This document shows positions 3,350 through 39,400 of a DNA stretch of 64,000 nucleotides, piece by piece (the first letter of the stretch is position 1; the number at the start of each line of letters is the position of its first letter). The position numbers and the translations under genes are program-made. This stretch comes from Saccostrea cucullata. Its lineage: Eukaryota. The notes under the pieces are model-generated. The model was given only the letters and a program-made list of their open reading frames with translations, had not been told where the DNA came from and ran no database searches. The stretch covers positions 124,001 through 188,000 of the forward strand of contig NW_026930986.1 of assembly GCF_032062105.1 (NCBI RefSeq), in the 5' to 3' direction.

Positions 3350-4666
3350 GGTCTTTCCACCCTTACAATTTTAATGGTTAAAAGTACAAAAATTGAATTT
3401 ATTTTCATTTAATAAAGTTTTATAAATTTACCAATTATTTCCAATGAAAATATATAGGTAGGCATATTATTTAAGATGGGAGATGTAAATAAACAGAGGC
3501 ATATGTCAACATTAAAAATCGTACATTTTTTGTGAACAGTATCATAAATATTATGTAAAAACTGAGTCAAATGCATAATTATAATTAGGGGTGTCAAAAT
3601 TGTCAATAATTGATATTCAAATATTCGATAGGAGTATTCGAATATATTCGAATATTCGATAAAATAAATACATCTTGCATTATTAAATATGCATCTTCAC
3701 TCTCCTGTAAAGCAGTATAGGTTTTATACCATTATTTTGGAATAAAAACTCATGTAGAGTTCGGAAAATGCAATACAAATACATATTTTTAAAAGAATTA
3801 TTGAATAGTATACATCCAAAATGTAATGACTGTTTTTAGAAAATTCAAAAGATTCTATAATATTTTCCAGATTAATTGAATGTCTAACTAAAGTCTACAC
3901 TGGTAACTCCTACAAATTTATACCAAGCAGAACAATTATCTAAAGGTGAAATATTAAAAGCAATTACTTTTTGCTAATTATAATTTCCTGATAATGATTT
4001 TTGATGATATTTACGTAAACAAGAAGTCCATGTGTTTACTGTAAAACTGGGCCCTAAACAACAATACAAACTGATTGTAAGTACTGGAAACTATTAAAGC
4101 ACTAATTAAGTGAACAAATAAATAAATTACTTTAATATACACATTTAAGGTATTCCAATAGGAGTTTTTTTTGTACAAACTTGATTCAATTTCTAATAAA
4201 ACTTGCCAGGTTTTTCTCTCTTTTTAATGCATGTATACTTAAAAACGAATATTCGAATCATAAATTTATATTCGAATATCAACTCATCGAATGAATATTC
4301 GAATATTCGAATATTCGTTGACATCCCTAATTATAATGCTGAAAGTTCCTAAATACCTGCTACTTGTAAGATACTTTTAAATTGTGAATATCAGGGAAAC
4401 TATTTTACATTTATATTGGAAGTACAATAAAGAAAATGCCTGAATGAAGCTACCTGGGCAGGCGTTATTGCACTTGTCAACATTTTTTAAAGATTGAATA
4501 ATTAAATAAAGGAAATATGCATTTTAAAAATTCTTTTGCTTAACAATATTTTTCATTACACCTATTGTAAAGCATTCTTCCAAAAGATATTGTTCTATTA
4601 GGTATGAATTTAAACTAATTACAGATTTAGCAAAAACCTATGACATCATAGGAGGGTGGAATTACC
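3350..4666. mobile_element. Kolobok-like non-autonomous element (TTAA TSD, GG..CC termini)
   Basis: ttaa|GGTCTTTCCACCCT ... AGGGTGGAATTACC|ttaa. Hosts the hAT MITE at 3586-4329. Confidence 0.65.
3586..4329. mobile_element. hAT-type MITE, copy 1 (744 bp)
   Basis: TAGGGGTGTCAA...TTGACATCCCTA termini, 8-bp TSD ATTATAAT, subterminal ATTCGAAT repeats. Confidence 0.9.
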
Positions 4667-9070: not shown

Positions 9071-9814
9071 TAGGGATGTCAACGAATATTCGAATATTCG
9101 AATATTCATTCGATGAGTTGATATTCGAATATAAATTTATGATTCGAATATTCGTTTTTAAGTATACATGCATTAAAAAGAGAGAAAAACCTGGCAAGTT
9201 TTATTAGAAATTGAATCAAGTTTGTACAAAAAAAACTCCTATTGGAATACCTTAAATGTGTATATTAAAGTAATTTATTTATTTGTTCACTTAATTAGTG
9301 CTTTAATAGTTTCCAGTACTTACAATCAGTTTGTATTGTTGTTTAGGGCCCAGTTTTACAGTAAACACATGGACTTCTTGTTTACGTAAATATCATCAAA
9401 AATCATTATCAGGAAATTATAATTAGCAAAAAGTAATTGCTTTTAATATTTCACCTTTAGATAATTGTTCTGCTTGGTATAAATTTGTAGGAGTTACCAG
9501 TGTAGACTTTAGTTAGACATTCAATTAATCTGGAAAATATTATAGAATCTTTTGAATTTTCTAAAAACAGTCATTACATTTTGGATGTATACTATTCAAT
9601 AATTCTTTTAAAAATATGTATTTGTATTGCATTTTCCGAACTCTACATGAGTTTTTATTCCAAAATAATGGTATAAAACCTATACTGCTTTACAGGAGAG
9701 TGAAGATGCATATTTAATAATGCAAGATGTATTTATTTTATCGAATATTCGAATATATTCGAATACTCCTATCGAATATTTGAATATCAATTATTGACAA
9801 TTTTGACACCCCTA
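9071..9814. mobile_element. hAT-type MITE, copy 2 (744 bp, inverted relative to copy 1)
   Basis: Reverse complement of 3586-4329 with its own 8-bp TSD ATTTCAAA. Confidence 0.9.
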
Positions 9815-11105
9815 ATTTCAAATCAATATGCTTAGCGCTTCCCAGTACTTTCAGTACTTTGACTTTTTTCTTGTTCTCATTCATTATTTAGTTGCTAAAT
9901 TAAAAAATTAAGATTGAAAAGTTGATTTTTGTTTAAATGAGAAACAAGAGAAAGGAATATTGAGCTTATTGATTTAATTGTTGTCATAAGCTAATTGTAA
10001 TTAAACGGTTTTACACTCCGCAAATTTAAGTTTACATGTTTACTTTTAACTGTTTGAGGAATTGCCGAATTGGAATATCAATAAATTGAACCATTTTATC
10101 TTTCCATACCAGGGTTTCCCAAGGCTCCGATATCGATTCCGTGTGACCTTTGAGTTGTCTAGAATGCCTGCTAACTAAGGAAGTCGATGAAATTGCGGTA
10201 CATAATTACAGTCTTCAAGCATTCCTGTTCATTGCAAATTGATTTCGGAGTTTTCTATGTAGTGTAGCGAGGGAAAGAAAATGGTAGATAGAAATTGATA
10301 TAACATGCATCACCAGTATTAGACGAGCTCCCAGACTCTGAAAATGAATATTAGTATTGATCTAGCTGCACCAAAATCGACTGTCTTAAAAGAAAACTTT
10401 AAGAACATTCTGTTTCGCGATTTTATTTCACAGCTTTTAAATATTGTGAATCATAAATGAAAAATAAGAGCAGAAAACAATTAATTAAAGCATTTCAAAT
10501 TTTGAAAAGATCTTTGTAGATTGCTTTTTGAAGACATATACATGCAATAATTTAGCTGTATACATACATGTAAAATAAAGGTAGATATTTTAATATAAAT
10601 TTACAACTGACTGTCAACGAAATACACTGAAAATACAAAAGCTGACACCCCCCCCCCTTCCAAAAGTAAAAAAAAAAAGAGGAAGAAATTTCTCTATTTA
10701 TTACTCTGCACTAGTATTATAGAGAAAACGATACCTTCGAATGATTTTGCAATCTAGGAGGGAGATGAATCTTATAAATAGAAATGGATAAATTTGATAA
10801 ATATTCTACTTCGTCACCCTCTAGTGGCCTAGCTCTGTGTTTGCAAGTGTCAGAATGATAATGCTGGTTATAAAACAAGCATGTTAACTGCAAAGTATCA
10901 CAAATTTTCATGATTTTAATTCTCATATATATCTAAAAAGGGACCGATTCATATCAGGGACCTTTTGGCATTTACTTCACCATGTCCTTTGCGTAGTGTT
11001 TATTTTTTTTCTTGACGGAATTCAATAGATCGATCCATTTGACTTTAAATTTTATATTCATTTGTTTTGAGTTTTGATTGAAAAGTGAAATTAGGAAAAA
11101 ATAAA

Positions 11106-16432: not shown

Positions 16433-19400
16433 ATGGCATCAGGTGGAAGACCAGAAAGACAAGCTCCTCCTGAAATAGTAAGACAAAATTACTTTCTAAC
16501 AGCATTCAAACCACAGGCACGTGAAGTTTTATCAATCAGTCGCTCAATATGCCAAATATCGAAAAATTCTACGTCCTCTATATATCATAAAAAATACACG
16601 AGGGGGAATTTTTTTTCAATATTTGGCATATATACATAGCTGCAGATGTGTAGCTCTCCGAAAAAAATTATTGATAGACTGGAGAGCTACAGTGCCACCC
16701 ATTGAAAAAACTGTATATTTATTGCGCACAAAAAAGTGCGCTCGATTCTTGATTAATTTTTCAAAATTCTTACCTCAATTGCAAAAATGGAAGATTTCAA
16801 AAAAATACTCTCTCCTCTATCAAGTTCTCTCGTAGTTGACATCTGAACGAAGCATATTGGACCGAATTATCTTTGAAACCAAAATGGCAGTATAAATAAG
16901 CGAAATGTCCGAAGATTGCAATATCAGGACCAGGAGGACTATTAACAACAATTATGAGGAATGTTTTGTTGTGGAAAGAGTCAAAGAATATGTTAGGAAC
17001 ACACGGTTAGTAATATTTTGAGATTACAGCTTGAAAAACATGGAGAAATAAATCGATAACCGAGCGCATTTTTTTGTGCGCAATAAATATACAGTTTTTT
17101 CAATGGGTGGCTCTGTAGCTCTCCGGTCTATCAATAAATGTTTTTTCGGAGAGCTACAGACCTGCAGCTAACACATACAATACTTGCAGTGTGTATATAA
17201 GTTGAACTGAAGCCATCACAAGAATCTCGTATAGCTTTTTGATGGTAAACAAGGGAGTTGAGCAGACACCATTTTTTTTTTAACATTTAATGATTTATAG
17301 GGTATATATTATACATGTACAATCAAATCTAATTATCAAATTAGCTGCCTAAATGGGAAAAGATTAAACTTCTTCGAGTTATTGGAGATTTTGAGATAAT
17401 GATTAAAATAATAAATGTATATAAAGAGAAAGTAGTTGGGACTGCCAACACACTGAAAACACATCACAAGTGTAACAGAGACATTTTATTGCTTCTCTGG
17501 GGATTGGACCTGGGGCTCTGGCTCAGTCCAGTGCTTTACCAATTGAGCTAAAGGGTTAACCCTTTAGCCCGAGGTAGTAGGAAGCCGTGTTTCTGACACT
17601 ACCACAGTAGTATTCAATACATTGTTGTTCATATAACGAGGTTCATCTGTAAGTGGAAACACAGGCACCTATGAGAGTTGCTTTACTGCTGGGGTTTTTA
17701 ACTGAACAATTAGGTTTGTTTCCAAGGAGCTTGAAGGAGGGAAGACTTTGGTGGTCAGACAGGTTCAATTGCAGTGGCCAGAGAGCTCAGTGATTTGAGC
17801 ACCTGACTGGAGATTCAGGGACTGGAGGGAGACTGGGGGGGGGGGACAAGTTTGAATCCTGGTCTGGTTTGTCACATTTTTTGCCTCTCCCATTACAAGA
17901 TATGTTTTATGATGTCAAATTGGAAATTTTTTCCTCACCTTAAGAGGTTAATGCTTGATGTTTGAAGTAAAACATCTGCATTCAATACAATAGTTCTCTA
18001 ACCATGCTATTATTTGTTCATTTCTTTTAGTTTTACAATGAGGATGAAGCAAAGAAATATTCTTCAAAGTAAGACTTTCTGTAAAATTTAGGCATTACAA
18101 TTGTTAAAAGCTGTTACATAAATTAGAGTTTCTACCATAAATTGGTGTAAAATAACATTTCAGTTTATGTTTGTTTTAAGCTTGTTACAAATTACATTGT
18201 TAGTGTACAAACCAAACTTAATGTTATGATATCAATGTTTTTTTTCCCCAAGACCTATTTCAAATGGTTCTTGTTCATCAGACTAATATACCGGTATACA
18301 TATAATAAAGATTTTATAGTAAAATTTTTTTGAGAACAACATTCACTTATTTTTAGAATGTTGCATTTTGTGTACAAATTAGCTGCAAGTTATATCATTG
18401 TATATACAAGTAATCCATACTGTTATGTGCTTTTATAGGTCATTAGTGCCTTTTACAGCACTCATTTAATTCTGCAGAAGTATATACATTTTGATATTCA
18501 TATTAACGTATTTCAGATGGAGAAAACGTCAGTGCACATTGTATGACATATATATTCTATTAAGAAAAAACTATTTTTTTCAGTACACGTATGATAGAAA
18601 TACAGAGCCAGTTGTCAGAGAGAGCCTTGGAGATACTGCAGCTTCCCGATGAGCCCTGTTTTATTCTAGACATTGGGTAGGCTTTATATTGGAGATGTTT
18701 TGTAAGGGCAAAAATATTCATTTGGTTTGTTGGAGACAAGGGCAACCAAACTAAATCTCACCATTTGATATGACTAGATCCAAATTGAATAGGGTTACTT
18801 TTGAAACATCAAATCTTAATGCGCAGAGAACATTTTTAGATGACAAATCTATGAAATTTTATTCTCAAGAAAATTTTGGTGCTATGGTATAATTTGAACA
18901 TTTCATCTGTTTCGATCTGATTTATCCAGATGGTTTTAACATTTCCTTTTTGAATTTTCAGGTGTGGGTCAGGTTTGAGTGGTGAGACAGTAACAGAACA
19001 AGGTCATTATTGGGTCGGCATTGACATCAGTTCTCACATGCTAGGTATGTGTCATTTATAAAACTTGCTGAAGTCAACAATGAAACAAACATTACTTTGA
19101 AAGGAGGAATTGTTATTACCCGGGTATATATTACATGTAACTAAATAGTATCATTGAACTGTTGAGATTGAAAGTAGTATTAAACTTAATGGTGACTCAT
19201 TGATACTGCTACGTTTACTCAGGTGTCGCTGTCGACCGGGAGGTAGAGGGGGACCTGATAGAGGGAGACATGGGGTATGGAATCCCCTTTAGACCTGGAA
19301 CTTTTGATGGTGTCATCAGGTAAAATATAAAATAATGGGTTTACTGCTTAAAGACCACAGTATTTTAAGTATAACATTTGTTTGTCTAAGGAACATTAAA

Positions 19401-26883: not shown

Positions 26884-29800
26884 CTAGGCCTTTATGGAGA
26901 GTTTCTCAAACCTTGACATCCAGCCATCGGCACTGGACCTGTGAATAATCAAATGAAAATAATCCTATACTGACAGCCAATTTAACAAGAAGTACAGTAT
27001 ATTGTATTTTGTATTAAATAAGAATTTACTTATCAATTTGATTGCTTCTTTGAGGAAGTAAATTCAAGTTTAAATGACAGTTCTATTGATATTTAATGAC
27101 TGACTACAAATAAACAGAACACAATCTCTGGGGAAAATATACAGTGAAGCATCATTTAGTCTTCATTAGTACTCCACATATTTTGAAATAAATCTAACAA
27201 TTGCTTAAAAAATTAAATTATTTCAGAAGGATTAAACATTATTAAAAATCTTAATGAGTGTGTTTAGGAGGTGGGTTAAAAGGTTAAAAGAACTTCACAG
27301 CTGAACATAATAATAGATTATAATGTTCATGATTATACACTATGAGTTCATCTTTGAAGATATACAATATCATCATTTAAAATACTTCACTTTGAAGATG
27401 TAAACAGACATGATCTACACTTTGAAGATGTAAACATACATAATTTACACTTTATTATCATGTATAATTTTGCTAGAAGCATCACTCGTGAAATAAAATT
27501 TCTCGCATGCATAAATTACATTTTTTAGGTGCTGAAATCTAATTTAACTGTTGATCAAATGTAGTCATGTATAATTTACACTCTGAAGATGTAGTCATGC
27601 ATACTCTACACTTTGAAGATGTAGTCATGCATAAATTACACTCTGAAGATGTAGCAAAACACATTCTACACTTACTGAACTTCACTTTTTAGGATCTACT
27701 CTACACTTACTGAACTTCACTTTTTAGGATCTACTCTACACTTACTGAACTTCACTTTTTAGGATTTACTCTACACTTACTGAACTTCACTTTTTAGGAT
27801 CTTTTCTCCAGCCAGCATCATATCAGCAATGCGGGACACAAAGGGGTCAAAGTTCAAACTTGCAGCTGCCACCACCTCATCTCCTCTTTAAAAAAAAATG
27901 AAAATCAGGAATAAAATGACAATACTTCAACAAGGTTGCTTTTCGCTGTTATTCAATAAATTTATCTGGTATTTCAGGACATAAATGTTGTAATGACCGT
28001 CATGTGATGAGCTTACTTTGTGTAGTAGGCAATGAACTTGGGAGCATCCAGGTCTCCATGTACAATGATGTCATCATATCCTGGACCATAACCTTGATAG
28101 CAACAGAAAGGTTAAAAGTTATAAATAAACTGTCTTCTAGAATAATACGATTTGTAATTTAACACATTTGATTTTTATCATACACAGTCAAAATATTTCA
28201 AATTACTTTCTCCAGAAAATTCTAGTCTTTTTTGTTATCCAGAAGTTTGCAAATGACACATACTACTGTCATTTTAAGGATTACAGACAACTTTTAATTC
28301 ACAATTAATTTATTCCTCTTTAAATCAAGTTAGAACGATGTAAACATTTTAAAGGTACAGTACCAATTCTATGAATTATTTTCTTTTTCACTACAAATTT
28401 GATATAGTCACCTGTGTAGCGAATGCTTTTCTTATACTGTACTGTCCAAAAGAATGGCACACTTCTAATTGGTTCATCTTTTCCCAAAATTCCAAGGGCT
28501 GCTGTTTTTCCTAAAAATAAAATACTAGCAATTAAAAGTCATTTTCAGATATCACATTTGTAGTACATGTATTAAATGAAATTAGACTTATGTTTTGTGA
28601 CTATATAAACCATATAACAATCAAAGTACTCAGAAGTACAGAGAGCCGGGCTCATTTACAGAGTAGAATGGATTTCTTACATGAATCACGTTTATATTCT
28701 GATGAAAAAATTATTTTAAAACTATCAATATAAATGATAAGACACTGACAGTGAGTTTTTCCTAATACCACGGTCCGATTTTGTCAGAATCAGAATTTCT
28801 GGTACCGCAGCTGAATGTAAAGAAACAGGCCATTCTGGTTCCCTCTCCTGCTTTACCTCGTTTTGTGACTATATATCAAAAATCCTTATGCTAATGAACT
28901 ATGTTCTTTGACTTATGAAGTTTTCAAAGTCATTACTACAAATGTTTATTTTATATAGATAAAAACTTTTGAGATGACTTTAAAATAGCGACTATTGAGT
29001 TAGGACCACATAAGCCGGCAATTGCTCCATACCATGTGCATGAGCCATCTGCCAGTGCTGGACATTAACTTTTTGATCTCCAACACTGAAGAGTGGGAAT
29101 TCCACAATGTCACCAGTAGCATAGACATCTGACTGATTTGTCTGCATCATCTTAAAACAAATTCATCAAGTGTAAATGTGCATCTATGATCGATAGGATG
29201 TATTTACATTTCTTTTCATCAATAGAACTCTTCTTATTCATAAATACACTATTTTTCTTTGCTTCTCCTCCATTGGCATATTCAAATTAATTAAAATATA
29301 CTCTTTAGCTACTATTACTTACTTTATTTACAGGAATGAATCCTCTGTTAGTCATGTCTATACCAGAATCTTTGATGAAATCAGTAGCAGGAACCACACC
29401 TGTCAAAAGAGAAGTTTACTCCCAAGTTTTCAAGAAGTACTGAGTAAATACATGTAACTACATGTACTACATGAGTCTTTAGATTTAATGTCAGACTCTT
29501 GTTTCTCTTACCTACTCCCATAATGCACACATCTGCTGGTAGCTTTGTGTCATCAGATAAAACAGCTTCAGTCACTTTACCATCACTCCCTACAAATTCC
29601 TTGATCCCCCTCTCAAAATAAAACTTCATTCCATTGTCTTCATGCATCTTTAAAAGATATTTTTTTAGAAATAAGCTTTTAACAAATGAAAACTTCAACA
29701 AAATTAAATCTACACCACCTGAAGATTTTGCATAGTAATATAACAATGCCCATGTCATTCTTCATCAGATTTTTAAAGATTTCCTCCATAAATATTTCAA

Positions 29801-32800
29801 ATTGAGCATTTGTCCCATGATCGGAAGATGATTGGTGTAATCCCCCATCAGCAACTGATCAAAGTTGATAAAATTAAGTTGCTACTGTTCACCTAGCACT
29901 CAAAAGTCTTATGGATGATCTGAAATCTTCAACAGAGGTCCAATGACAAGTTTTGAAGTATATCTAAAATTGTTTCTAAAATATTTCAAATGAATCTTTG
30001 CTCCCCTATTGTGGCCCCACACTACCCCTTGGAACATGATTTTAACAAATTTGAAAATTCATCATTAAATAAATATATGCAGCAAAAAAAATAGCATTTG
30101 ATAAAAAAAAAAAAAACAAACAAACAAAAAAACACAGGTGAATGATGTATTTGCTTTACATTAAACCATTGAGATTTTACCTTTTTGAGCAGGGTGCCAA
30201 TTTTTAATCCTAGAGTATTTTGAAATGGGACTTTTCCTCTAGCTAACACAGATACAGATCTAGCTTTGTCTACAACAGAAGCTGCCACCTCCATCCCTAA
30301 GCAGAATAGTTCTCAGTTATATTTTATACACACACTTCAGGAATGAATGCAAGGAATATTTTATATGGGTTGTGTGCTGCAAAATGTGGAGATGACAAAA
30401 TATATAGGGAAGACTGTATTTCGAAGATTTCAAATTCCAGATATGTTAAACAACATGGGTCTGCAAAGAATATCTGACAGAAAGATAATGCATATTTTGA
30501 TAGACGAATGCTTTTAATTGTGGAATTCTACATGGAATTTTGTTATTCCTTTTATTTTGACTAGGCAATATACAGGCAGTTACAATTTTAAACACTTGAC
30601 TTTTAGGCTGAAATAATACACCAAAAAGAAGACGTGGTCATCTTTTTTTATCTGTACCCTGATACAGGACTAATTCAGGCTATACCGTATTTAGTCCTCA
30701 ACATATAAACAACATCCTACACTTGGGTAAATACACTGTATTAGTCTGCTCAACTCTACACTTTGGCAATTGAAAAGAATATAACGAAAGAATATTAGTA
30801 CACAGATTTTAAAAGCATTATAACTTGTCTGAGGAAATGTGCAAGCTAGTGATACAGAAAAAAATAGTGCAGTGTTAATTGTGAATAATTTTGAGGAAAA
30901 TCAGTGCTTATGTTTCTCAGTGAATGAGGTGTAGGTATATAAAAGTAACACACTATTTCACAGCAAGACAGAAAAAAATGAATCTAAAATCCCATCACCA
31001 TGCAAGACAAATCTAAAACCTAGAAGACAGACTTTTTTGGGTTCCACAATTTTTAAAAAAAAATTACCATCTTGTAAATATTAAATATTAGTCTCCAAGG
31101 TTTTAAAAAGTCACTATGCACCACTAAAGAAGCACATTTAACAAGAAACTAAGCATTATGTGGTACCTTCTGTAAAACTGATCCCACTTTCTCTCCTAGA
31201 ACCAGCTGGAAGGGGACTTTGATTATGTCCACCACTGAAACAGTGGCAGCGGTGCCAGCTAATGCAGACGCCACCTCCATTCCTGTTCAAGAAAGTCAAC
31301 CCAAGTTACCACACCATCCGCCTGCTTTACTTAAGCAATGTACAATATGTATTTATCCTGCATCTAAAAGCACCTGCCTGTAAAGTACTTTCTCAGATGT
31401 TGCAAAAGTTTCATCAAGATCAATGTTTTAAAAGCAATTTTCTGTCTGATGCACTGTAAAAGTACCTCACAAATACCTCTGCTGCAACAGCATATCTTTT
31501 ACAATTAAGTGCTATGTGATGTAACATTAATTTGTTATAAAGATTAAACAAATATTTTTGAAACAAAGAACTAAGAATTTTTTAGCATCTTATACTATTA
31601 CAGATGGAGTAATAACTAAAACCTCTTAAATATGAAGACTGAGGACAAAAACTTTTATCTTTTTAATTATAAGTTGAACTTTAAAAATTGGAATCAATAT
31701 TGAAAATGGACCATATATCTTAGCATTAATTATAATGCCACTCAAAAGGTGAAAATCAAGAAAATATTCCTTGCATTCATTTAATCAATTGCTTTGATGT
31801 TTGAAAATCAGAAATACACTTGCAATGAATCGCATTCAATTATTTTTTTAATTTTAATTTTCAATGTGTTTTAAAGTAAGCAATAAGCAAATTTACTGAA
31901 TATATCTGATTGACTAATTCCTTGGATCATTGCATTCTTTGTTTACTGAGAAAACCTGACAGTAACATCGCACGACCACTGAAATGAACGAAGCCATCAG
32001 ACAAACCAATGAACGAGGATCCAATAATGACAACATTTTTGCCTGCAGCCTTTTCCGCGATTTGATTGGCATCCTCTGGAGTTCTCAGCTGATAAACATT
32101 CTCTAGATCCGTTCCTGGGATTGGTAACACTCGTGGTCTGAAGAAAGATCAAAATAATCCTCATATACAGTTGAGAATGTGATGGCATATCAGTGTTTCA
32201 TTTAAGTTCTTTAAATGTGTGTGATAAGTATCTAAATTTTCATATTATTTCCATTAAATAGGAAAAAATTCATGTAAATCCAAGTAAAAATCTTTTATAG
32301 AGAACCTTTAATGTATAAACTGGAATTAGTTTGCATTTTTGTATTAGACTGATAGAATTTATAATGTACAATGTACATTTATCATGTTTATGCATTAAAC
32401 TATACTACTGTCTTTTTTAAAAAATCTAGAATGTTCTGTTATCACAGAAAACAAAATGAATGTTGGATAAAATGATTTGCAAATGATAACAAATAATTGC
32501 ATAATAATTAGTCTGAGTCTAATTAAGGCTAGTTTTATCATCAGAAACTGTCTTACCGCCCTCCTGTGGCGACGACTAGTGACGTGTACGATTCTGTGCT
32601 GCCATCTTTGAAGGTGACTGTCTTGCTGGAAGTGTCTACAGCAGTCGCCTAAATATCATAAGACATGAGGGATAATTAATGAAATATCATTTCTATTTAG
32701 TGGGTACTTTTACACAGATCAGATAAAATAATATTGACCTTTAATCTATTCTAAAGATATTCCTATATCTTCGTGCTATACTTTTGATTCACTGAGTAAA

Positions 32801-35800
32801 GTTCATCAAGTGAGGTTCTTGGAGAGTAATAAAATCCTCTGTTTTATATTCAGAAGCCAAGGTGACCTCAGTTTGACATAAATTATGTAAGAGACATAAA
32901 CAAATCAGTGCTACTGAAGTGTAATATTGTACCTGTTTCTGTTTAAGGATATTAATGTCAGCTTTGGTATAAAAGTCCAAGCTCCTTAGAGCTATCTTAT
33001 CTGCTGTCATGTCCAATGCCTAAAAATTAAAAAAAAATTATTTTACGAAACGTAAAAGAGAAGAAAATCAAGAAATTTTGAAATATTTTATGTAAAATTT
33101 TGTATCAAGCCAGTGAACTCCAAAAACCTTGCTAAGTTTGGGTCTGTCGTACGGAATGTTGTTTTCTTGTGTTGCTATGGTGATTTCTCCAGTAAACCCT
33201 TCCTGTCTCAATGTTTCAGCACAAGTCACAGAGGAGGGGCCTAAAAGTACAAGATTTTGATTAGTTTAGTGATTTAATACACTGAACATTTGGTTTATTT
33301 CATAAATCCGACAAATTTCCAAAAATCCATGAGTGAATATTTTCATCATGTTTAAACATTTACTATACAAAGTATTGAAAATAAAAATTCATTAAAATAT
33401 AAAATGCTAATATTTCTTCTCATGTTTTTTAAAATATCAAACTCACCAAATATTCTAAATGTCAAAATACCTATAATGCAGTATAAAATACATAAATGTG
33501 CCAAAACCATATAAAATTATCTCAGTTCAACACATGATCAATCGTGATTATTTAAAATGATTAAAGTTAAAACAGATATCCTCGTTACCTCCACCTATGA
33601 TAAGGACTTTTTTGTCACTGGGTTTGGCTGCTTTACACATGTTACGCTGGACTTTAGGATCAGCTAGTGCTGATTTGCTGGCAGTGACTTTAACATTGCC
33701 ATCCTTGACTTCAGTCTGGAAATGTCAGAAAGTCTGTCAGAACTTTATCAAGTTCATCATCATTACACAAATTATTGTAAAAAAACAGTGAATTAATTTC
33801 AATGGCAATAAATACTACCACAGATATAAGTACCGGTACACAAAGATATACATTTAACTTCATAGATCAACACTTTTATTTTAAAAATTCAAATAAAATT
33901 AAAATGGATATTTTATTTAAATTTCATGAAATTACATTGATAACTTTGCACTCAAGTTTCACTACTCCTGTATGCATTTGGTATTTCAGCATATCATGCC
34001 TGAGTCTATGCACACAACATTCAATGTTTATTATTAACCTTGAACTTTGGAATGCTGTCTAGTCCTGGGAAGTCTTCTATATCCCCCGTTTTCACACTGA
34101 AGCAAGCTCCGTGCCAGGGGCAGCGGACCCTGCCATTACAGTGACTTCCATTGATGAGTGGAGCCCCGTAGTGAGTACACTTAGATCCCAGAGCATGGAA
34201 TTCTGGTCCTTCACGGACAACTAGGACCTTACCATCACCAAGGTCAAACTCCTTCATCCTACCATTATAAACAGGGAAAATGTCATCTTTATTTTACACA
34301 TGTACCAAAAATGGAACTCTTATCAAGTGCACCTATGAGTTCATTCGGTTTTTTAATTCACATTTAAAAATCTTCCTTAACTCTTACAATGAAGAACAAG
34401 AGGCCCACGGGCCTTATAGGTCACCTGAGTAGCATGTAACAACTTTCCAACAATTGAATTTGGTTCGTGTTTTAAACCAGAGGCCATGATTTAAATTCAC
34501 AAGTTTGAAAGAGGCACCATTGCTTATCATAATTATACACTTGGCACGCTTACTCTAGTTACTTAATACCCAAAGGTAGATCAGAATAACAAAGAGAAAA
34601 TGCACTTCCACTTTATAACCAGTTGTGAATCCCACCCCACAGGAACCACTGACCCTGGGGCCAAATATTTCAAAATTTTGGAAATTTTATCATAAATTTT
34701 ATTTCATCATAAATGGTTGATTAATACCAAAGAGCAGATTTAAAAGCATTAATTTATTTTCAGACTATGTAACATCCCACCCCCACCCCACCCCTCAATA
34801 CCCCTGACCCTGGGGACCTGAAAGTAATCATTTTGCTAGATGCACCTTTCTTCATCATAAATATAGTTAGATCATTGGCATAAAACCTGAAGCAAAGGAA
34901 AAGGTTTTCTAAGAATTAATATATTTTCACTATATAATCAAAAGACACCCGCCCCCTTATAGCAAATGGCAAAACCCTTAACCCAGGGGCCATAAGATTC
35001 ACAAATTTGGTTGAGGCACTCTTGCTCATGATAACTATGTACTTAGTTTATATAATACCCAGGAGCAGAGAAGAAGATTTTCTAAGAATTAATGTCTTTT
35101 CACTATATAATCAATTGAGCCCCCCCCCCACACCAGAACCCCTGACCCAGAAGCCATAAAATTCACAATTTTGGAAGAGGCACTCGAGCTCATCATAACT
35201 ATGTACTTAGTTAGTTTATTTGATACCAGGAGCAGAGAAGAAGATTTTCTAAGAATAAATGACTTTTTCATTATATAATCTTATCAATAGAGCCCTGCCC
35301 TAACACTAGATCCCCTGACCCTGGGGCCATAAAATTAATAATTTTGAAAGAGGCACTCTTGCTCATCATAACTATGTACTTAGTTAGTTTATTTGATACC
35401 CAGGAGCAGATAAGATTTTCAAAGAATTAATGCATTTTCACTATATAATCTATTTAGCCCAGCCCTAGCACTAGAACCCCTGACCCTGGGGCCATGAATT
35501 TCACAATTTTGGTAGAGAACTCAATGCTCATTACATTCATGCCAACAGTTTGATTGCTTGATGTCCAGGAGTAAAGAAGAAGATTTTTAAAGATTGCACT
35601 AATTTTAGTGGTTTTGGCCCCATCCCCCAGGCCCCAGGGGGGCAGGGACCATGAAATTCAAAATTTTTGTTCCCCTTCACCCATAGATGCTGTATACCAA
35701 ATTTGGTTGAAATTGGTTCCGTGGTTTCAGAAAAGAAGCTGAAAATGTTCAAATGTTAACACACGTATGGCACGCCAAATTCACAAAAATGAGCTAAACA

Positions 35801-36421
35801 TAGTTTCACAGTCGATAAACTAGGTTTATCGGTTGCAAACTATAGTTTACGGACTGTAAACTATAGCTAACAATGTTAATCTATATTTTACATCCGTAAA
35901 CCATAGTTAACGCGATAATCTATGTTTCACAACCGTAAACTATACTTAACACTAAAAACAATCATTTGCAATTGCAAAACAAAGATTATCTGATAAATAC
36001 AGTTTCACGATTTGTAAACTATCGTTTACAAACCGTTAACTATAGTTAACGATCTGATAAATATAGTTTCACGATTTGTGAAACTATGATTAACAACTCT
36101 TAACTATAGTTTTCGATTGTAAACAATAGTTTACAAACGTGAATCTATGTTTATCAACAAAATCTATTGTTAACGCTTATTACAGAGAGATAAACTAAGA
36201 TTATCATTCGTAAACTATAGTTAACAACCGTTAAATACAGTTTTACAGATGAAAACTATACTTAACGAATCGTTAACTATACTTAACGAATCGTTAACTA
36301 TAGTTTACGATTTGTAAACTATAGTTTACAGTCGATAAACCTAGTTTATCAATTGTGAAACTATGTTTATCTCATTTTTGTGAATTTGGTGTGCCATACA
36401 CACGACGACAGACGAAAACGG

Positions 36422-36461
<40 letters not shown>

Positions 36462-39400
36462 TCCTATTAAATAATCTAAATTGCTTCCTTTTGACACTGA
36501 ATATTGAATGTAAACATACTAACCCAGGAATAATGGTAAGTGTATAGAATGAAAATAAATTTTTTTAAAAAATCTGAGTAACAATATGGATTCATCATTG
36601 ATTATTGGACCAATATTGTATTTTGTGCTCTACTCTTTCACATGAATTATCATTCCCACATACATGCTGGTTCACTGAATCTTCTGATATACATGAATTT
36701 TCCTCCCACTGTAACATAAAATACCCCTTCCCCTCCCCCCTCCTGAATCAAAATGATTCTACTGTGACTATTTACATGTACAAAGTATTAGTTCCTTTTA
36801 CAAGAAATAACTTATTAGATTGTAAGTACTTTAATAACTCACTCTCCATCCTTGAGATCAGATTCTCTACAGACGACTGCTGACACTGTGTCTGCCATAT
36901 CCTCTACTGAATCTTCCTGCTGCTCCACACCAACACCGTCTGTGACAACCTGGACTGGTTCTCCTTGGTCTGGTTCCTCCTGATCTTCTGTCTGTAAAAA
37001 CACAGCACTCACTAACAAACAAATCCTCTTCAAAAGGATTTAAAATATACTGGAAATTATTTCAGAGCCAGTGCTCTGTAAACCAGGTATTTTCAGTCAG
37101 GTTTGTTTAAGTTAGAGAAATCCTAGTTCTGAGAATTTGGAACACATGTTTTTATCTGTGTTTTATGACCTTTTTGTAGAGATGACAAGTTTAACACATT
37201 AATGGTGAAGTGTTCGTCTGATCATTAAAGATGTCATACACCTGTAACAAATGACAAGCAACCAGTCCCTAACTGCAAATAAGACTTGCTGTGTATGCAC
37301 AAAGACTAGATAATGAGAAAACCCGTAACACTGTGGTCACTTCGGGGGCTATTTGACACTTGTAGTGTACATCTAATATTTTCTAGGTGAACAAGTAATT
37401 AAAAATAGTTCTCTTAACAGTCTGGATAGGTTGTCTCCATGAGAACACATTTATGCTATATAATAATGTTAATTAAAACTACAAAACATAACACAAAATC
37501 ATGACAATGATAGCTGTAGTAGTTACTTGTTCTAGATGTGTTTCAGATCTGCCTTGTGTTACCTGCTCTGTGTTGTCTGGCTGTGAGTCGTCTGCTATTG
37601 TGGCTTCCTCCTCTGTCGTGTCTGCTGGTTCCTCCTCTGTGGTATCTGGGGGTACCTCCTCCGTTGTATCTGGTGGTACCTCCTCTGTGTTATCTGCTGG
37701 CTCCTCCTCTTTATTGTCTACTGAGCTAGGCTCCTCTGAGGGTGGCTCCTTGTTTGTGTCCTCAGGACCTTCTCCTGTCTCCTCCTCTTCAGTGTTCTTT
37801 ACTTCAGACTCCTCAGCCTCTTTCTGATTTTCTTTCAAATCTTCAGCCTCTTTCTGAGGTTCCTCCGCTTGGTTTTGAACGTCTTTGTCAAGATCTTCTT
37901 CTTCTAAGGGACCTTGTTCCAAAGTTTCTGATTCAGATTTCTCTTCTTTCTGGTCCTCTACTTTTAGTGTAGTTTCCTCAGAGTTCACTGTTTTACTAGT
38001 TTCAGAATTTTCTTCACTACTGTTATTAGCATTTACAGAATCTTTAGAATCATCAATATTATTTGTTTCACTAGATTCCTCTGAATTTTTAGTGGTTGTA
38101 GTATTTTGTTCACCACTCACTGCATTAGAATTTTCTTGAGCATGAGCACTGCTATCGTTTATCGGCTCCTCTTTGGTCACTGGGAGACTGGTTCTATTTA
38201 TAGGTGTGCAGTCCACATTTTCTGATTTCCCAGAATTCACGGAATCAGGGTCTATATTTTTAGATGTCCTAGCTTCTACACCATTGGATTTCTTGCTGCC
38301 TGATCTCTTCTTCACAGATTCTCCAGCTATAAAATAAAGGTCATAATTTATTAAGCTTTATGAAATTTATTATGCATATTCAATTCAAAAATATCTTATA
38401 TATGATTTAAATTGAATTGTTTCAATTATGTTATCCTATAGAAATATACATTGTATGTGTTGCATACATGTATTGCATGCATACTAATAAAATTGTATCT
38501 TATCTTCTAGTAAAATTTTGTGACATATCAGTACACAAATACTGAGAGCAAATTCTACTATCCCAAAGTACTTTGTATTTGTATTAAACCCTTTCACATA
38601 TTTCTTTAATATGAACGTGTCACAATGAGCATTTTATTTACTTTGTTTCTTCTACAAATATTGAAATAGGTGTGTCAGGGAGACACTTATGCCCCTGGTT
38701 AGCATTTAACATGCAAGTTTAAAATAAATGTCCAAGAGTGTGAATATAAAAAATGGTGTAAATGGCCCAAATATGATGAACTTGATCTATCTGTCCTTAC
38801 ATATATCCATTATCTAAATTAAAGAACCCTTTTAAGAACAACAATTGAAGTTTTCTTCTTTGGGGAATTAACCTGGTTACATTAAACATGAAAGTGTTCC
38901 ATGAAAGACAAGCTGTCCATCCAAATATTGGATATAGTATAGCTATATCCTTCCCACATCACACAAATACTTCAACTTTAATGAAATCAAACTTGGACAC
39001 CTCTCCTCTTTTGGGGTCTCGATCATCAATGATTTTTTTTCAGATAAGTTGTCGATTTTTTAGCTTAAATAATAATAATCTGTAATCATTTAATCATATA
39101 ATATATAACACAATTATTATTGTTTTCTTAATTTAGTTTGATGATTCGGCCACCTGAGGAGTAAATATTCATTGAGCATGCATACTGACCTCAAAATGTA
39201 CAATATTTTTTCATCATTCTTCATTTCACCTCAGATTAAAACTTTTAAAGAACCAACAAAAATTATTACATTGGAATGAAGTGAACTGATGCATACATTT
39301 AATTTTTCACACTGAGAAACATACATATTAATATAATAGCTACATTACATTTATAAACATGCTATTTAAATTTAAAAAGTCTACCTACCATTACAAAAAC

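What the first reader, a model, noticed from the sequence alone, without database searches (positions are those of the whole stretch)
30342..31781. Perfect 21-nt intronic inverted repeat positioned as docking/selector duplex for the exon switch
Seen: AATGAATGCAAGGAATATTTT (30342-30362) is the exact reverse complement of AAAATATTCCTTGCATTCATT (31761-31781). In the minus-strand pre-mRNA, one arm is in the intron upstream of exon A and the other is about 45-65 nt upstream of the exon B acceptor. Pairing would loop out exon A and bring exon B close to the constitutive donor at 32007. There is no TSD or MITE context, and the loop holds a coding exon. Established: long-range RNA pairing governs mutually exclusive exons in insect Dscam1, 14-3-3 and Mhc. 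Inference: the same mechanism controls the choice here.
Basis: partly seen in the sequence, partly recalled or inferred. Interest (0 to 1): 0.82.

Follow-up and report, generated by a model that had tools for sequence, protein, structure and literature searches.

The report
Conserved RNA duplex steering exon choice
Two short intron segments of an oyster AIFM3 gene can base-pair, are the only intron sequence kept across four oyster genera, and are placed so that pairing would loop out one of two alternative exons and favour the other, a splicing switch known from insects and here seen in a mollusc.

Summary
30342-30362 is the exact reverse complement of 31761-31781. The 21-mer and its flanks are single-copy in the 1.17 Gb genome.

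The arms lie in introns of a minus-strand AIFM3-like gene from a Saccostrea oyster. They bracket exon A (31282-31167). The 3' arm ends 45 nt before exon B (30296-30181). A and B are homologous 116-nt exons. Including both, or neither, gives an immediate stop codon.

- In Ostrea edulis, Crassostrea virginica and Magallana angulata the introns are otherwise unalignable.
- A 16-nt docking core and its 14-nt complement are retained at the same places in all four genera.
- The duplex is extended by different, complementary flanks in each lineage.
- The pearl oyster Pinctada lacks the motif. Its best intron 1/intron 2 duplex is 17 bp of unrelated sequence and sits in the same architecture.

Best reading: a docking/selector duplex that loops out exon A and activates exon B. 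It resembles Drosophila srp stem I and Dscam exon 6. It has only one selector.

It is a new member of a known kind, and I found no earlier mollusc example.

The parts
32007..32137 (-). Upstream constitutive exon of the AIFM3-like gene. It encodes ...[13 protein letters not shown], the start of the NAD(P)H-binding fold. The donor GT is at 32006-32005 and the exon ends in codon phase 1.
   Evidence: Translation and Pfam Pyr_redox_2 match. tblastn to the orthologues.
31761..31781 (-). 5' arm of the duplex (docking site), 225 nt downstream of the constitutive donor. The core conserved in four oyster genera is 31767-31782 (AAATGAATGCAAGGAA in RNA sense).
   Evidence: exact repeat. (conservation). 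(pairing table).
31167..31282 (-). Exon A, 116 nt, the proximal mutually exclusive exon of the ...[15 protein letters not shown]... type. It lies inside the 1398-nt loop closed by the duplex.
   Evidence: It is identical to Saccostrea cucullata isoform X1.
30342..30362 (-). 3' arm of the duplex (selector). It ends 45 nt upstream of the exon B acceptor. The conserved core is 30343-30356 (TTCCTTGCATTCAT in RNA sense).
30181..30296 (-). Exon B, 116 nt, the distal mutually exclusive exon of the ...[12 protein letters not shown]... type. It is 50% identical to exon A at protein level.
   Evidence: It is identical to Saccostrea cucullata isoform X2.
29512..29647 (-). Downstream constitutive exon ([14 protein letters not shown]...).
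   Evidence: The exon end is inferred from the G|GTAAGA donor and the database protein.

Best explanation
The two arms form a long-range intronic RNA duplex in the AIFM3 pre-mRNA. It works as a docking site in the intron after the constitutive exon, paired with a single selector just upstream of exon B.

When the duplex forms, exon A and 1.3 kb of flanking intron are looped out. The exon B acceptor is then brought to about 270 nt from the upstream donor, which favours the B isoform.

When the duplex does not form, the proximal exon A is used and exon B is skipped. Transcripts with both exons or with neither carry an immediate stop codon, so only A or B mRNAs are productive.

What is shown:
- the duplex and its uniqueness in the genome;
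- the exon structure;
- conservation of both arms and of the architecture.

What is inferred:
- that pairing happens in vivo;
- that pairing raises exon B use.
For: 1. The arms are a perfect, single-copy 21-bp complement.
2. In four oyster genera (Saccostrea, Ostrea, Crassostrea, Magallana) the only deep-intronic words of 10 nt or more shared across introns 1-3 are AAATGAATGCAAGGAA in intron 1 and its complement TTCCTTGCATTCAT in intron 2. These are also the best intronic hits in every pairwise blastn between oysters.
3. The flanks of the core differ between lineages but stay complementary. At the first position 3' of the core the pair is U-A in Saccostrea, A-U in Magallana and U-G in C. virginica. 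At the second it is A-U against C-G. Ostrea and C. virginica extend the stem on the other side with GA/UC. The contiguous Watson-Crick stems are 21, 17, 17 and 16 bp, with energies of -26.4 to -28.7 kcal/mol.
4. Pinctada imbricata lacks the motif. Its top-ranked duplex among all intron pairs is 17 bp of unrelated sequence at -31.8 kcal/mol. It lies 266 nt after the donor and ends 74 nt before exon B.
5. Distances to the upstream donor (116-267 nt) and to exon B (47-74 nt) are held. Distances to exon A vary from 478 to 1879 nt and from 804 to 4632 nt.
6. The longest perfect intron 1/intron 2 complement exceeds all 300 shuffles in each of the five species.
7. Folding supports the stem. It closes the MFE and the centroid of the 1466-nt arm-to-arm RNA. 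Its ensemble probability is 0.68 in a 1901-nt context. In 2.5-2.6 kb folds of Ostrea and Magallana the pair probabilities are mostly 0.99-1.00, with the end pairs at 0.86 and 0.94.
8. Exons A and B are both 116 nt. A+B gives TAG nine codons into B, and skipping both gives TGA at the third codon.
9. Both isoforms are annotated in four oyster species and in Mytilus.
10. In Drosophila srp, an upstream docking site pairing with a selector between the two exons directs use of the distal exon. This was proven with compensatory mutations (PMC4691838).
Against:
- The 14-nt core never varies, so inside the core there is no covariation. The covariation comes from two to three flanking positions and from Pinctada.
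- By RNAduplex energy alone each duplex is only moderately beyond shuffles: 0/60, 1/60, 2/60, 5/60 and 3/30.
- In the 1901-nt fold the single MFE structure uses a local hairpin for the 5' arm.
- Exon A has no selector, and no conserved second pairing was found that would explain the skipping of B.
- Whether the Pinctada arms are single-copy in that genome could not be checked.
- The direction of the effect is taken by analogy.
Confidence: 0.75

Rival explanations
1. The duplex is real and conserved, but it acts with the opposite sign or on another step. For example, it may occlude the branch-point region of exon B and so repress B, or it may set timing rather than choice.
For: The selector lies only 45-74 nt upstream of the exon B acceptor, where distal branch points can lie. 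All 12 full-length assembled oyster mRNAs that I could see carry exon A, so the duplex is not driving most transcripts to B.
Against: Usual branch points lie 18-40 nt upstream of the acceptor, which is downstream of the selector. In every experimentally tested system with this layout, pairing activates the exon after the selector (PMC4691838; PMC6071210). The loop contains exon A, not exon B.
Confidence: 0.1
2. The inverted repeat flanking exon A promotes back-splicing of exon A into a circular RNA. Any effect on the A/B choice is a by-product.
For: The arms lie in the introns on both sides of exon A. From general knowledge, flanking complementary sequences promote exon circularisation in animals.
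Against: The arm positions are held relative to the upstream donor and the exon B acceptor. Relative to exon A the distances vary four- to six-fold. From general knowledge, the 16-21 bp stems are shorter than the repeats usually needed for circularisation, and a 116-nt circle would be very small.
Confidence: 0.06
3. The two conserved islands are independent binding sites for splicing factors and do not pair.
For: The core is invariant, which is what a protein-binding motif would also show. The arms contain GAAUG and UGCAUU, which are loosely like Rbfox-type motifs (from memory, not tested).
Against: Two unrelated motifs would not be reverse complements over 14-16 nt. They would not gain lineage-specific complementary extensions. 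They would not be replaced in Pinctada by another complementary pair at the same places.
Confidence: 0.05
4. The repeat is a neutral accident or a transposon remnant with no function.
For: The window holds about nine perfect inverted repeats of 19 nt or more within 5 kb, and most look transposon-derived, though I did not examine them.
Against: Both arms and flanks are single-copy in the genome. The complementarity does not extend into a longer imperfect terminal repeat. Both arms are conserved across four genera while the surrounding introns have diverged beyond alignment.
Confidence: 0.02

Closest known systems
Drosophila serpent (srp) exon 4.1/4.2: upstream pairing, stem I (Yue et al. 2016, PMC4691838)
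   Same: Both are two-exon mutually exclusive clusters. In both, a conserved docking element in the intron after the upstream constitutive exon pairs with a selector between the two variable exons. The proximal exon is looped out and the distal exon is activated. The stem strengths found here lie in a narrow band, which fits the graded strength-response shown for srp.
   Different: srp has a second, downstream pairing (stem II) that activates the proximal exon. No conserved or statistically supported intron 2/intron 3 pairing was found here. The gene and the phylum also differ, and nothing has been tested experimentally here.
Insect Dscam1 exon 6 docking site and selector sequences (Graveley 2005, as summarised in PMC6071210)
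   Same: The docking site lies upstream of the cluster and the selector lies immediately upstream of the variable exon. Pairing loops out the intervening variable exons. The elements are conserved islands in otherwise diverged introns.
   Different: Dscam1 has 48 selectors competing for one docking site, plus a repressor that keeps unselected exons silent. Here there is one selector and no competition.
14-3-3zeta, Mhc and MRP1 competing structures in insects
   Same: Splicing of mutually exclusive exons is governed by conserved intronic base pairing.
   Different: In those genes the docking site lies downstream of the cluster (PMC6071210). Here it lies upstream.
Human ATE1 exons 7a/7b, elements R1-R5 (PMC7797038)
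   Same: It is a two-exon mutually exclusive pair controlled by conserved complementary intronic elements.
   Different: ATE1 uses competing pairings (R1 and R4 compete for R3) plus an ultra-long-range stem. Here a single stem was found.
Inverted repeats flanking circularised exons
   Same: Complementary arms sit in the two introns that flank an exon.
   Different: The arm positions here track the upstream donor and the next exon's acceptor, not exon A. The stems are also short.

Membership tests
Docking/selector RNA-structure control of mutually exclusive exons | A tandem cluster of homologous exons of equal length, used one at a time | tested here: met
   Exons A and B are each 116 nt, share the same phase and are 50% identical at protein level. 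Isoform pairs of equal length that differ only in this 38-aa segment are annotated in Saccostrea, Ostrea, C. virginica, Magallana and Mytilus. Including both exons or neither gives an immediate stop. Read-level use in this species was not seen.
Docking/selector RNA-structure control of mutually exclusive exons | A conserved intronic docking element in an intron flanking the cluster | tested here: met
   AAATGAATGCAAGGAA is identical in intron 1 of four oyster genera, 116-267 nt after the donor. The flanks are unalignable.
Docking/selector RNA-structure control of mutually exclusive exons | A selector complementary to the docking site, immediately upstream of a variable exon | tested here: met
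   TTCCTTGCATTCAT ends 47-54 nt before exon B in the four oysters. The unrelated 17-nt Pinctada selector ends 74 nt before exon B.
Docking/selector RNA-structure control of mutually exclusive exons | Pairing maintained in evolution, through covariation or turnover of the stem with the architecture kept | tested here: met
   The flanking pairs change on both sides: U-A, A-U and U-G at one position, A-U and C-G at the next. The stems are extended in lineage-specific ways. Pinctada has a wholly different duplex at the same positions. The core itself is invariant and says nothing either way.
Docking/selector RNA-structure control of mutually exclusive exons | Several selectors that compete for one docking site | tested here: not met
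   No second copy of the selector, allowing up to 3 errors, lies upstream of exon A in any species. The only similar stretch is the coding 3' end of the upstream exon.
Docking/selector RNA-structure control of mutually exclusive exons | Disruptive mutations shift exon choice and compensatory mutations restore it | not testable with these tools
   This needs a minigene or an in vivo experiment.
Bidirectional pairing model (srp type) | A second conserved pairing between the inter-exon intron and the downstream intron | tested here: not met
   The best intron 2/intron 3 duplexes are within the shuffle range: 11/60, 5/60, 21/60, 2/60 and 24/30. No shared intronic element lies there.
MITE or transposon terminal inverted repeats | Multiple copies in the genome, with longer imperfect terminal repeats | tested here: not met
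   The arms and 400-600 nt of flank are single-copy in the 1.17 Gb genome. The complementarity stops abruptly at 21 nt.
Known structured RNA families (Rfam) | A match at the gathering score | tested here: not met
   There are no Rfam matches in 28000-34500.

The most novel reading that the evidence does not exclude
The duplex may be a physiological sensor as well as a fixed bias. Its stability is held at about -26 to -32 kcal/mol across lineages even when the sequence is replaced. In an intertidal ectotherm, temperature or transcription speed would then set how often the stem forms. That would toggle AIFM3 between an Asp-type (NADH-like) and an Arg-type (NADPH-like) cofactor exon. The architecture may be pteriomorph-wide or mollusc-wide, because the exon pair is seen in bivalves and gastropods.
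Probability: 0.12. Interest if true: 0.85.

Novelty: new member of a known kind. Interest (0 to 1): 0.6.

Why it matters
RNA-structure control of mutually exclusive exons is documented mainly in arthropods and in a few vertebrate genes. In the papers I could search I found no case in a mollusc or in AIFM3.

- This example is unusually clean. It has one stem and two exons, and everything else in the introns has diverged. That makes it a simple system for testing how stem strength sets an isoform ratio.
- Comparing the oysters with Pinctada shows turnover of the sequence with retention of the architecture. That supports repeated, convergent origin of such switches.
- The switch selects between two versions of the NAD(P)H-binding strand of a redox enzyme. 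The splicing decision therefore probably has a direct biochemical read-out.

Tried and rejected
There is therefore no read-level evidence.
- Orthologous DNA: the look-up of encoding contigs found nothing for 8 of 12 proteins. Both Saccostrea isoforms, probably the window's own genome, and both Mytilus coruscus products were among the failures. Mytilus, scallops and gastropods therefore could not be examined at DNA level.
- Pinctada copy number: the genome search on the Pinctada locus is not possible, so the copy number of the Pinctada arms is unknown.
- Metagenome scan: a scan with a database protein segment gave only intron-less or bacterial matches. An exon-only query was too short.
- Second pairing: an intron 2/intron 3 pairing that would loop out exon B was considered and rejected as not beyond shuffles.
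- Transposon remnant: rejected.
- Known RNA family: rejected.
Exons were searched singly by reference, and full-length comparisons used database proteins. Exons were joined only inside one local script, to read the frames.
- Literature: the paper of Yue et al. 2017 (PMC5711460) is not held.

Full report
**Observation**

The + strand at 30342-30362 reads AATGAATGCAAGGAATATTTT, and 31761-31781 is its exact reverse complement. The arms are 21 nt, 1398 nt apart, and the match does not extend on either side.

No match is expected by chance in the window. In 300 dinucleotide shuffles of the two introns the longest perfect complement reached 16 nt, with a mean of 10.4.

In the whole 1.17 Gb assembly only these two sites match exactly. 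Seventeen sites match with two mismatches. By my own rough calculation from base composition this is about the chance number for an AT-rich 21-mer, although the tool's reversed-pattern control gave only 4. The flanks 30297-30700 and 31400-32006 match nothing but themselves. The repeat is therefore real, not chance and not a dispersed element.

One caution: the window holds about nine perfect inverted repeats of 19 nt or more within 5 kb, and most look like parts of transposon terminal repeats, though I did not examine them. Length alone would not have settled the matter.

**Gene context**

The minus strand carries an AIFM3-like gene, with a Rieske exon at 34257-34024 and Pyr_redox_2 exons. The relevant parts are:
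- The constitutive exon 32137-32007 ends ...GSSFIG in phase 1, with GT at 32006-32005.
- Exon A is 31282-31167 and exon B is 30296-30181. Both are 116 nt, share the same phase and are 50% identical as protein.
- The downstream exon starts at 29647.

Joining A and B gives TAG nine codons into B. Skipping both gives TGA at the third codon. Only A-or-B mRNAs are therefore productive.

The window peptides are identical to Saccostrea cucullata AIFM3-like isoforms X1 (A) and X2 (B). Isoform pairs of equal length that differ only in this segment are annotated in Ostrea edulis, Crassostrea virginica and Magallana gigas/angulata. A-type and B-type segments also occur among annotated proteins of Mytilus, other bivalves and gastropods. 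The exon duplication is therefore old.

In the pre-mRNA the 5' arm begins 225 nt after the constitutive donor. The 3' arm ends 45 nt before the exon B acceptor. The loop contains exon A.

**Comparative test**

I fetched three orthologous loci: Ostrea edulis (L009), C. virginica (L010) and Magallana angulata (L011). I located the four exons in each by tblastn. Exon order and splice sites are the same in all. Intron 1 is 678-976 nt and intron 2 is 870-3204 nt.

Across introns 1-3, the only deep-intronic words of 10 nt or more shared by all four genera are two:
- AAATGAATGCAAGGAA in intron 1;
- TTCCTTGCATTCAT in intron 2.

These two are reverse complements of each other. In each pairwise blastn-short comparison between oysters these islands are the best intronic hits. 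Everything else is noise or poly-A.

The flanks of the core differ between lineages but remain complementary:

| Species | Extension beyond the core | Contiguous stem | RNAduplex energy (kcal/mol) |
|---|---|---|---|
| Saccostrea | six A/U pairs on the inner side | 21 bp | -28.0 |
| Ostrea | GA/UC on the outer side | 17 bp | -26.4 |
| C. virginica | GA/UC on the outer side, plus a U-G | 17 bp | -28.7 |
| Magallana | AC/GU on the inner side | 16 bp | -26.7 |

At the first position 3' of the core the pair is U-A in Saccostrea, A-U in Magallana and U-G in C. virginica; it is mismatched in Ostrea. At the second position it is A-U against C-G.

**Independent lineage**

In Pinctada imbricata (L012) the oyster motif is absent, even allowing two substitutions. 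I ranked duplexes among all three intron pairs. The top duplex joins a 17-nt perfect stem of unrelated sequence. One arm is in intron 1, 266 nt after the donor. The other is in intron 2 and ends 74 nt before exon B. The energy is -31.8 kcal/mol.

Intron 1 is 2164 nt and intron 2 is 4722 nt. The chance that a randomly placed best hit falls within 300 nt of the donor and within 100 nt of exon B is about 0.3% (my arithmetic).

In all five species the longest perfect intron 1/intron 2 complement exceeds all 300 shuffles. By RNAduplex energy, which tolerates bulges, the excess is more modest: 0/60, 1/60, 2/60, 5/60 and 3/30.

**Geometry**

| Distance | Range across the five species |
|---|---|
| Upstream donor to docking site | 116-267 nt |
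| Selector to exon B | 47-74 nt |
| Docking site to exon A | 478-1879 nt |
| Exon A to selector | 804-4632 nt |

The elements are therefore anchored to the upstream donor and the exon B acceptor. That fits the approximation and looping-out model. It argues against a role centred on exon A, such as circularisation.

**Folding**

- The 1466-nt arm-to-arm RNA closes with the 21-bp stem in both the MFE and the centroid structure.
- In a 1901-nt context the single MFE structure uses a local hairpin for the 5' arm, but the ensemble probability of the long-range stem is 0.68.
- In 2.5-2.6 kb folds of the Ostrea and Magallana regions the core is in the MFE. Its pair probabilities are mostly 0.99-1.00, with the end pairs at 0.86 and 0.94.

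**Mechanism**

The best reading is a docking/selector duplex that loops out exon A and brings the exon B acceptor to about 270 nt from the upstream donor. Exon A is the default when the stem does not form.

All 12 full-length assembled oyster mRNAs that I could see carry exon A. That is consistent with A as the default, but it is weak evidence, because assemblies show the dominant form and only 15 of 114 cluster members were listed.

The closest proven analogue is the upstream pairing (stem I) of Drosophila srp. There, disruption lowers use of the distal exon, compensation restores it, and the effect scales with stem strength (PMC4691838). Dscam exon 6 shares the upstream docking layout.

Two features of the known systems are not met here:
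- There is only one selector.
- There is no supported second pairing between introns 2 and 3.

How exon B is skipped when A is chosen is not explained by any conserved element. A weak acceptor that depends on the stem is my inference.

**Limits**

- The core is invariant, so covariation rests on two to three flanking positions plus Pinctada.
- The copy number of the Pinctada arms could not be checked.
- Mytilus and other molluscs could not be fetched.
Exons were searched singly by reference.

**Novelty**

I found no paper on mutually exclusive exons in AIFM3, or on docking/selector pairing in a mollusc. I rate this a new member of a known kind. The comparative support is strong and the system is unusually simple to test.

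Noticed in passing
window 31167-31282 and 30181-30296; proteins P0153-P0229: The two exon types are widespread in Mollusca. The A type (...[17 protein letters not shown]...) is nearly invariant from oysters to Mytilus, scallops, Haliotis and a chiton. The B type (...V.RG..PF.N...) is more variable and resembles the single form of non-molluscs. A carries Asp and B carries Arg after the second strand of the NAD(P)H fold.
   Followed up: partly
L012:16043-16160 (Pinctada imbricata): The A-type exon is 118 nt instead of 116 in this assembly, and its frame is broken near the start. This is either an assembly error or a decaying exon. Only the B form is annotated there.
   Followed up: partly
window 32007-32022 against 31767-31782: The coding 3' end of the upstream exon (...TCGTTCATTG|GT) resembles the selector. 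It can pair weakly with the docking core, at -9.7 to -12.0 kcal/mol in the four oysters. This could transiently mask the donor before the selector is transcribed, or it could be a coincidence of the SFIG codons.
   Followed up: partly
window 31283-31303: About 20 nt directly upstream of the exon A acceptor (GGGTTGACTTTnTTGAACAG) are conserved in the four oysters and include a TTGAC branch-point-like motif. The exon B acceptor region is much less conserved.
   Followed up: no
window 31802-31845: A near-palindromic stretch upstream of the docking site in the RNA contains both docking-like and selector-like words. It forms the local hairpin with the 5' arm in the 1901-nt MFE structure. It is not conserved in the other oysters.
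   Followed up: partly
window 3583-4329 and 9071-9817; 16694-16735 and 17070-17111; 35775-36389: There is a perfect 747-nt inverted repeat pair 4.7 kb apart, which looks like a large terminal-inverted-repeat element. There are also several MITE-like inverted repeats, one of them in an AIFM3 intron.
   Followed up: no
window 37479-38315 (-): A long acidic, low-complexity N-terminal coding exon belongs to the same gene. Its C. gigas orthologue starts MGKGQSK, a myristoylation-like start. Its length varies greatly between oysters, with total protein length from 819 to 900 aa.
   Followed up: no
L010:20231-22552: A reverse-transcriptase ORF of 773 aa (RVT_1) lies on the opposite strand inside a later intron of the C. 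virginica gene.
   Followed up: no
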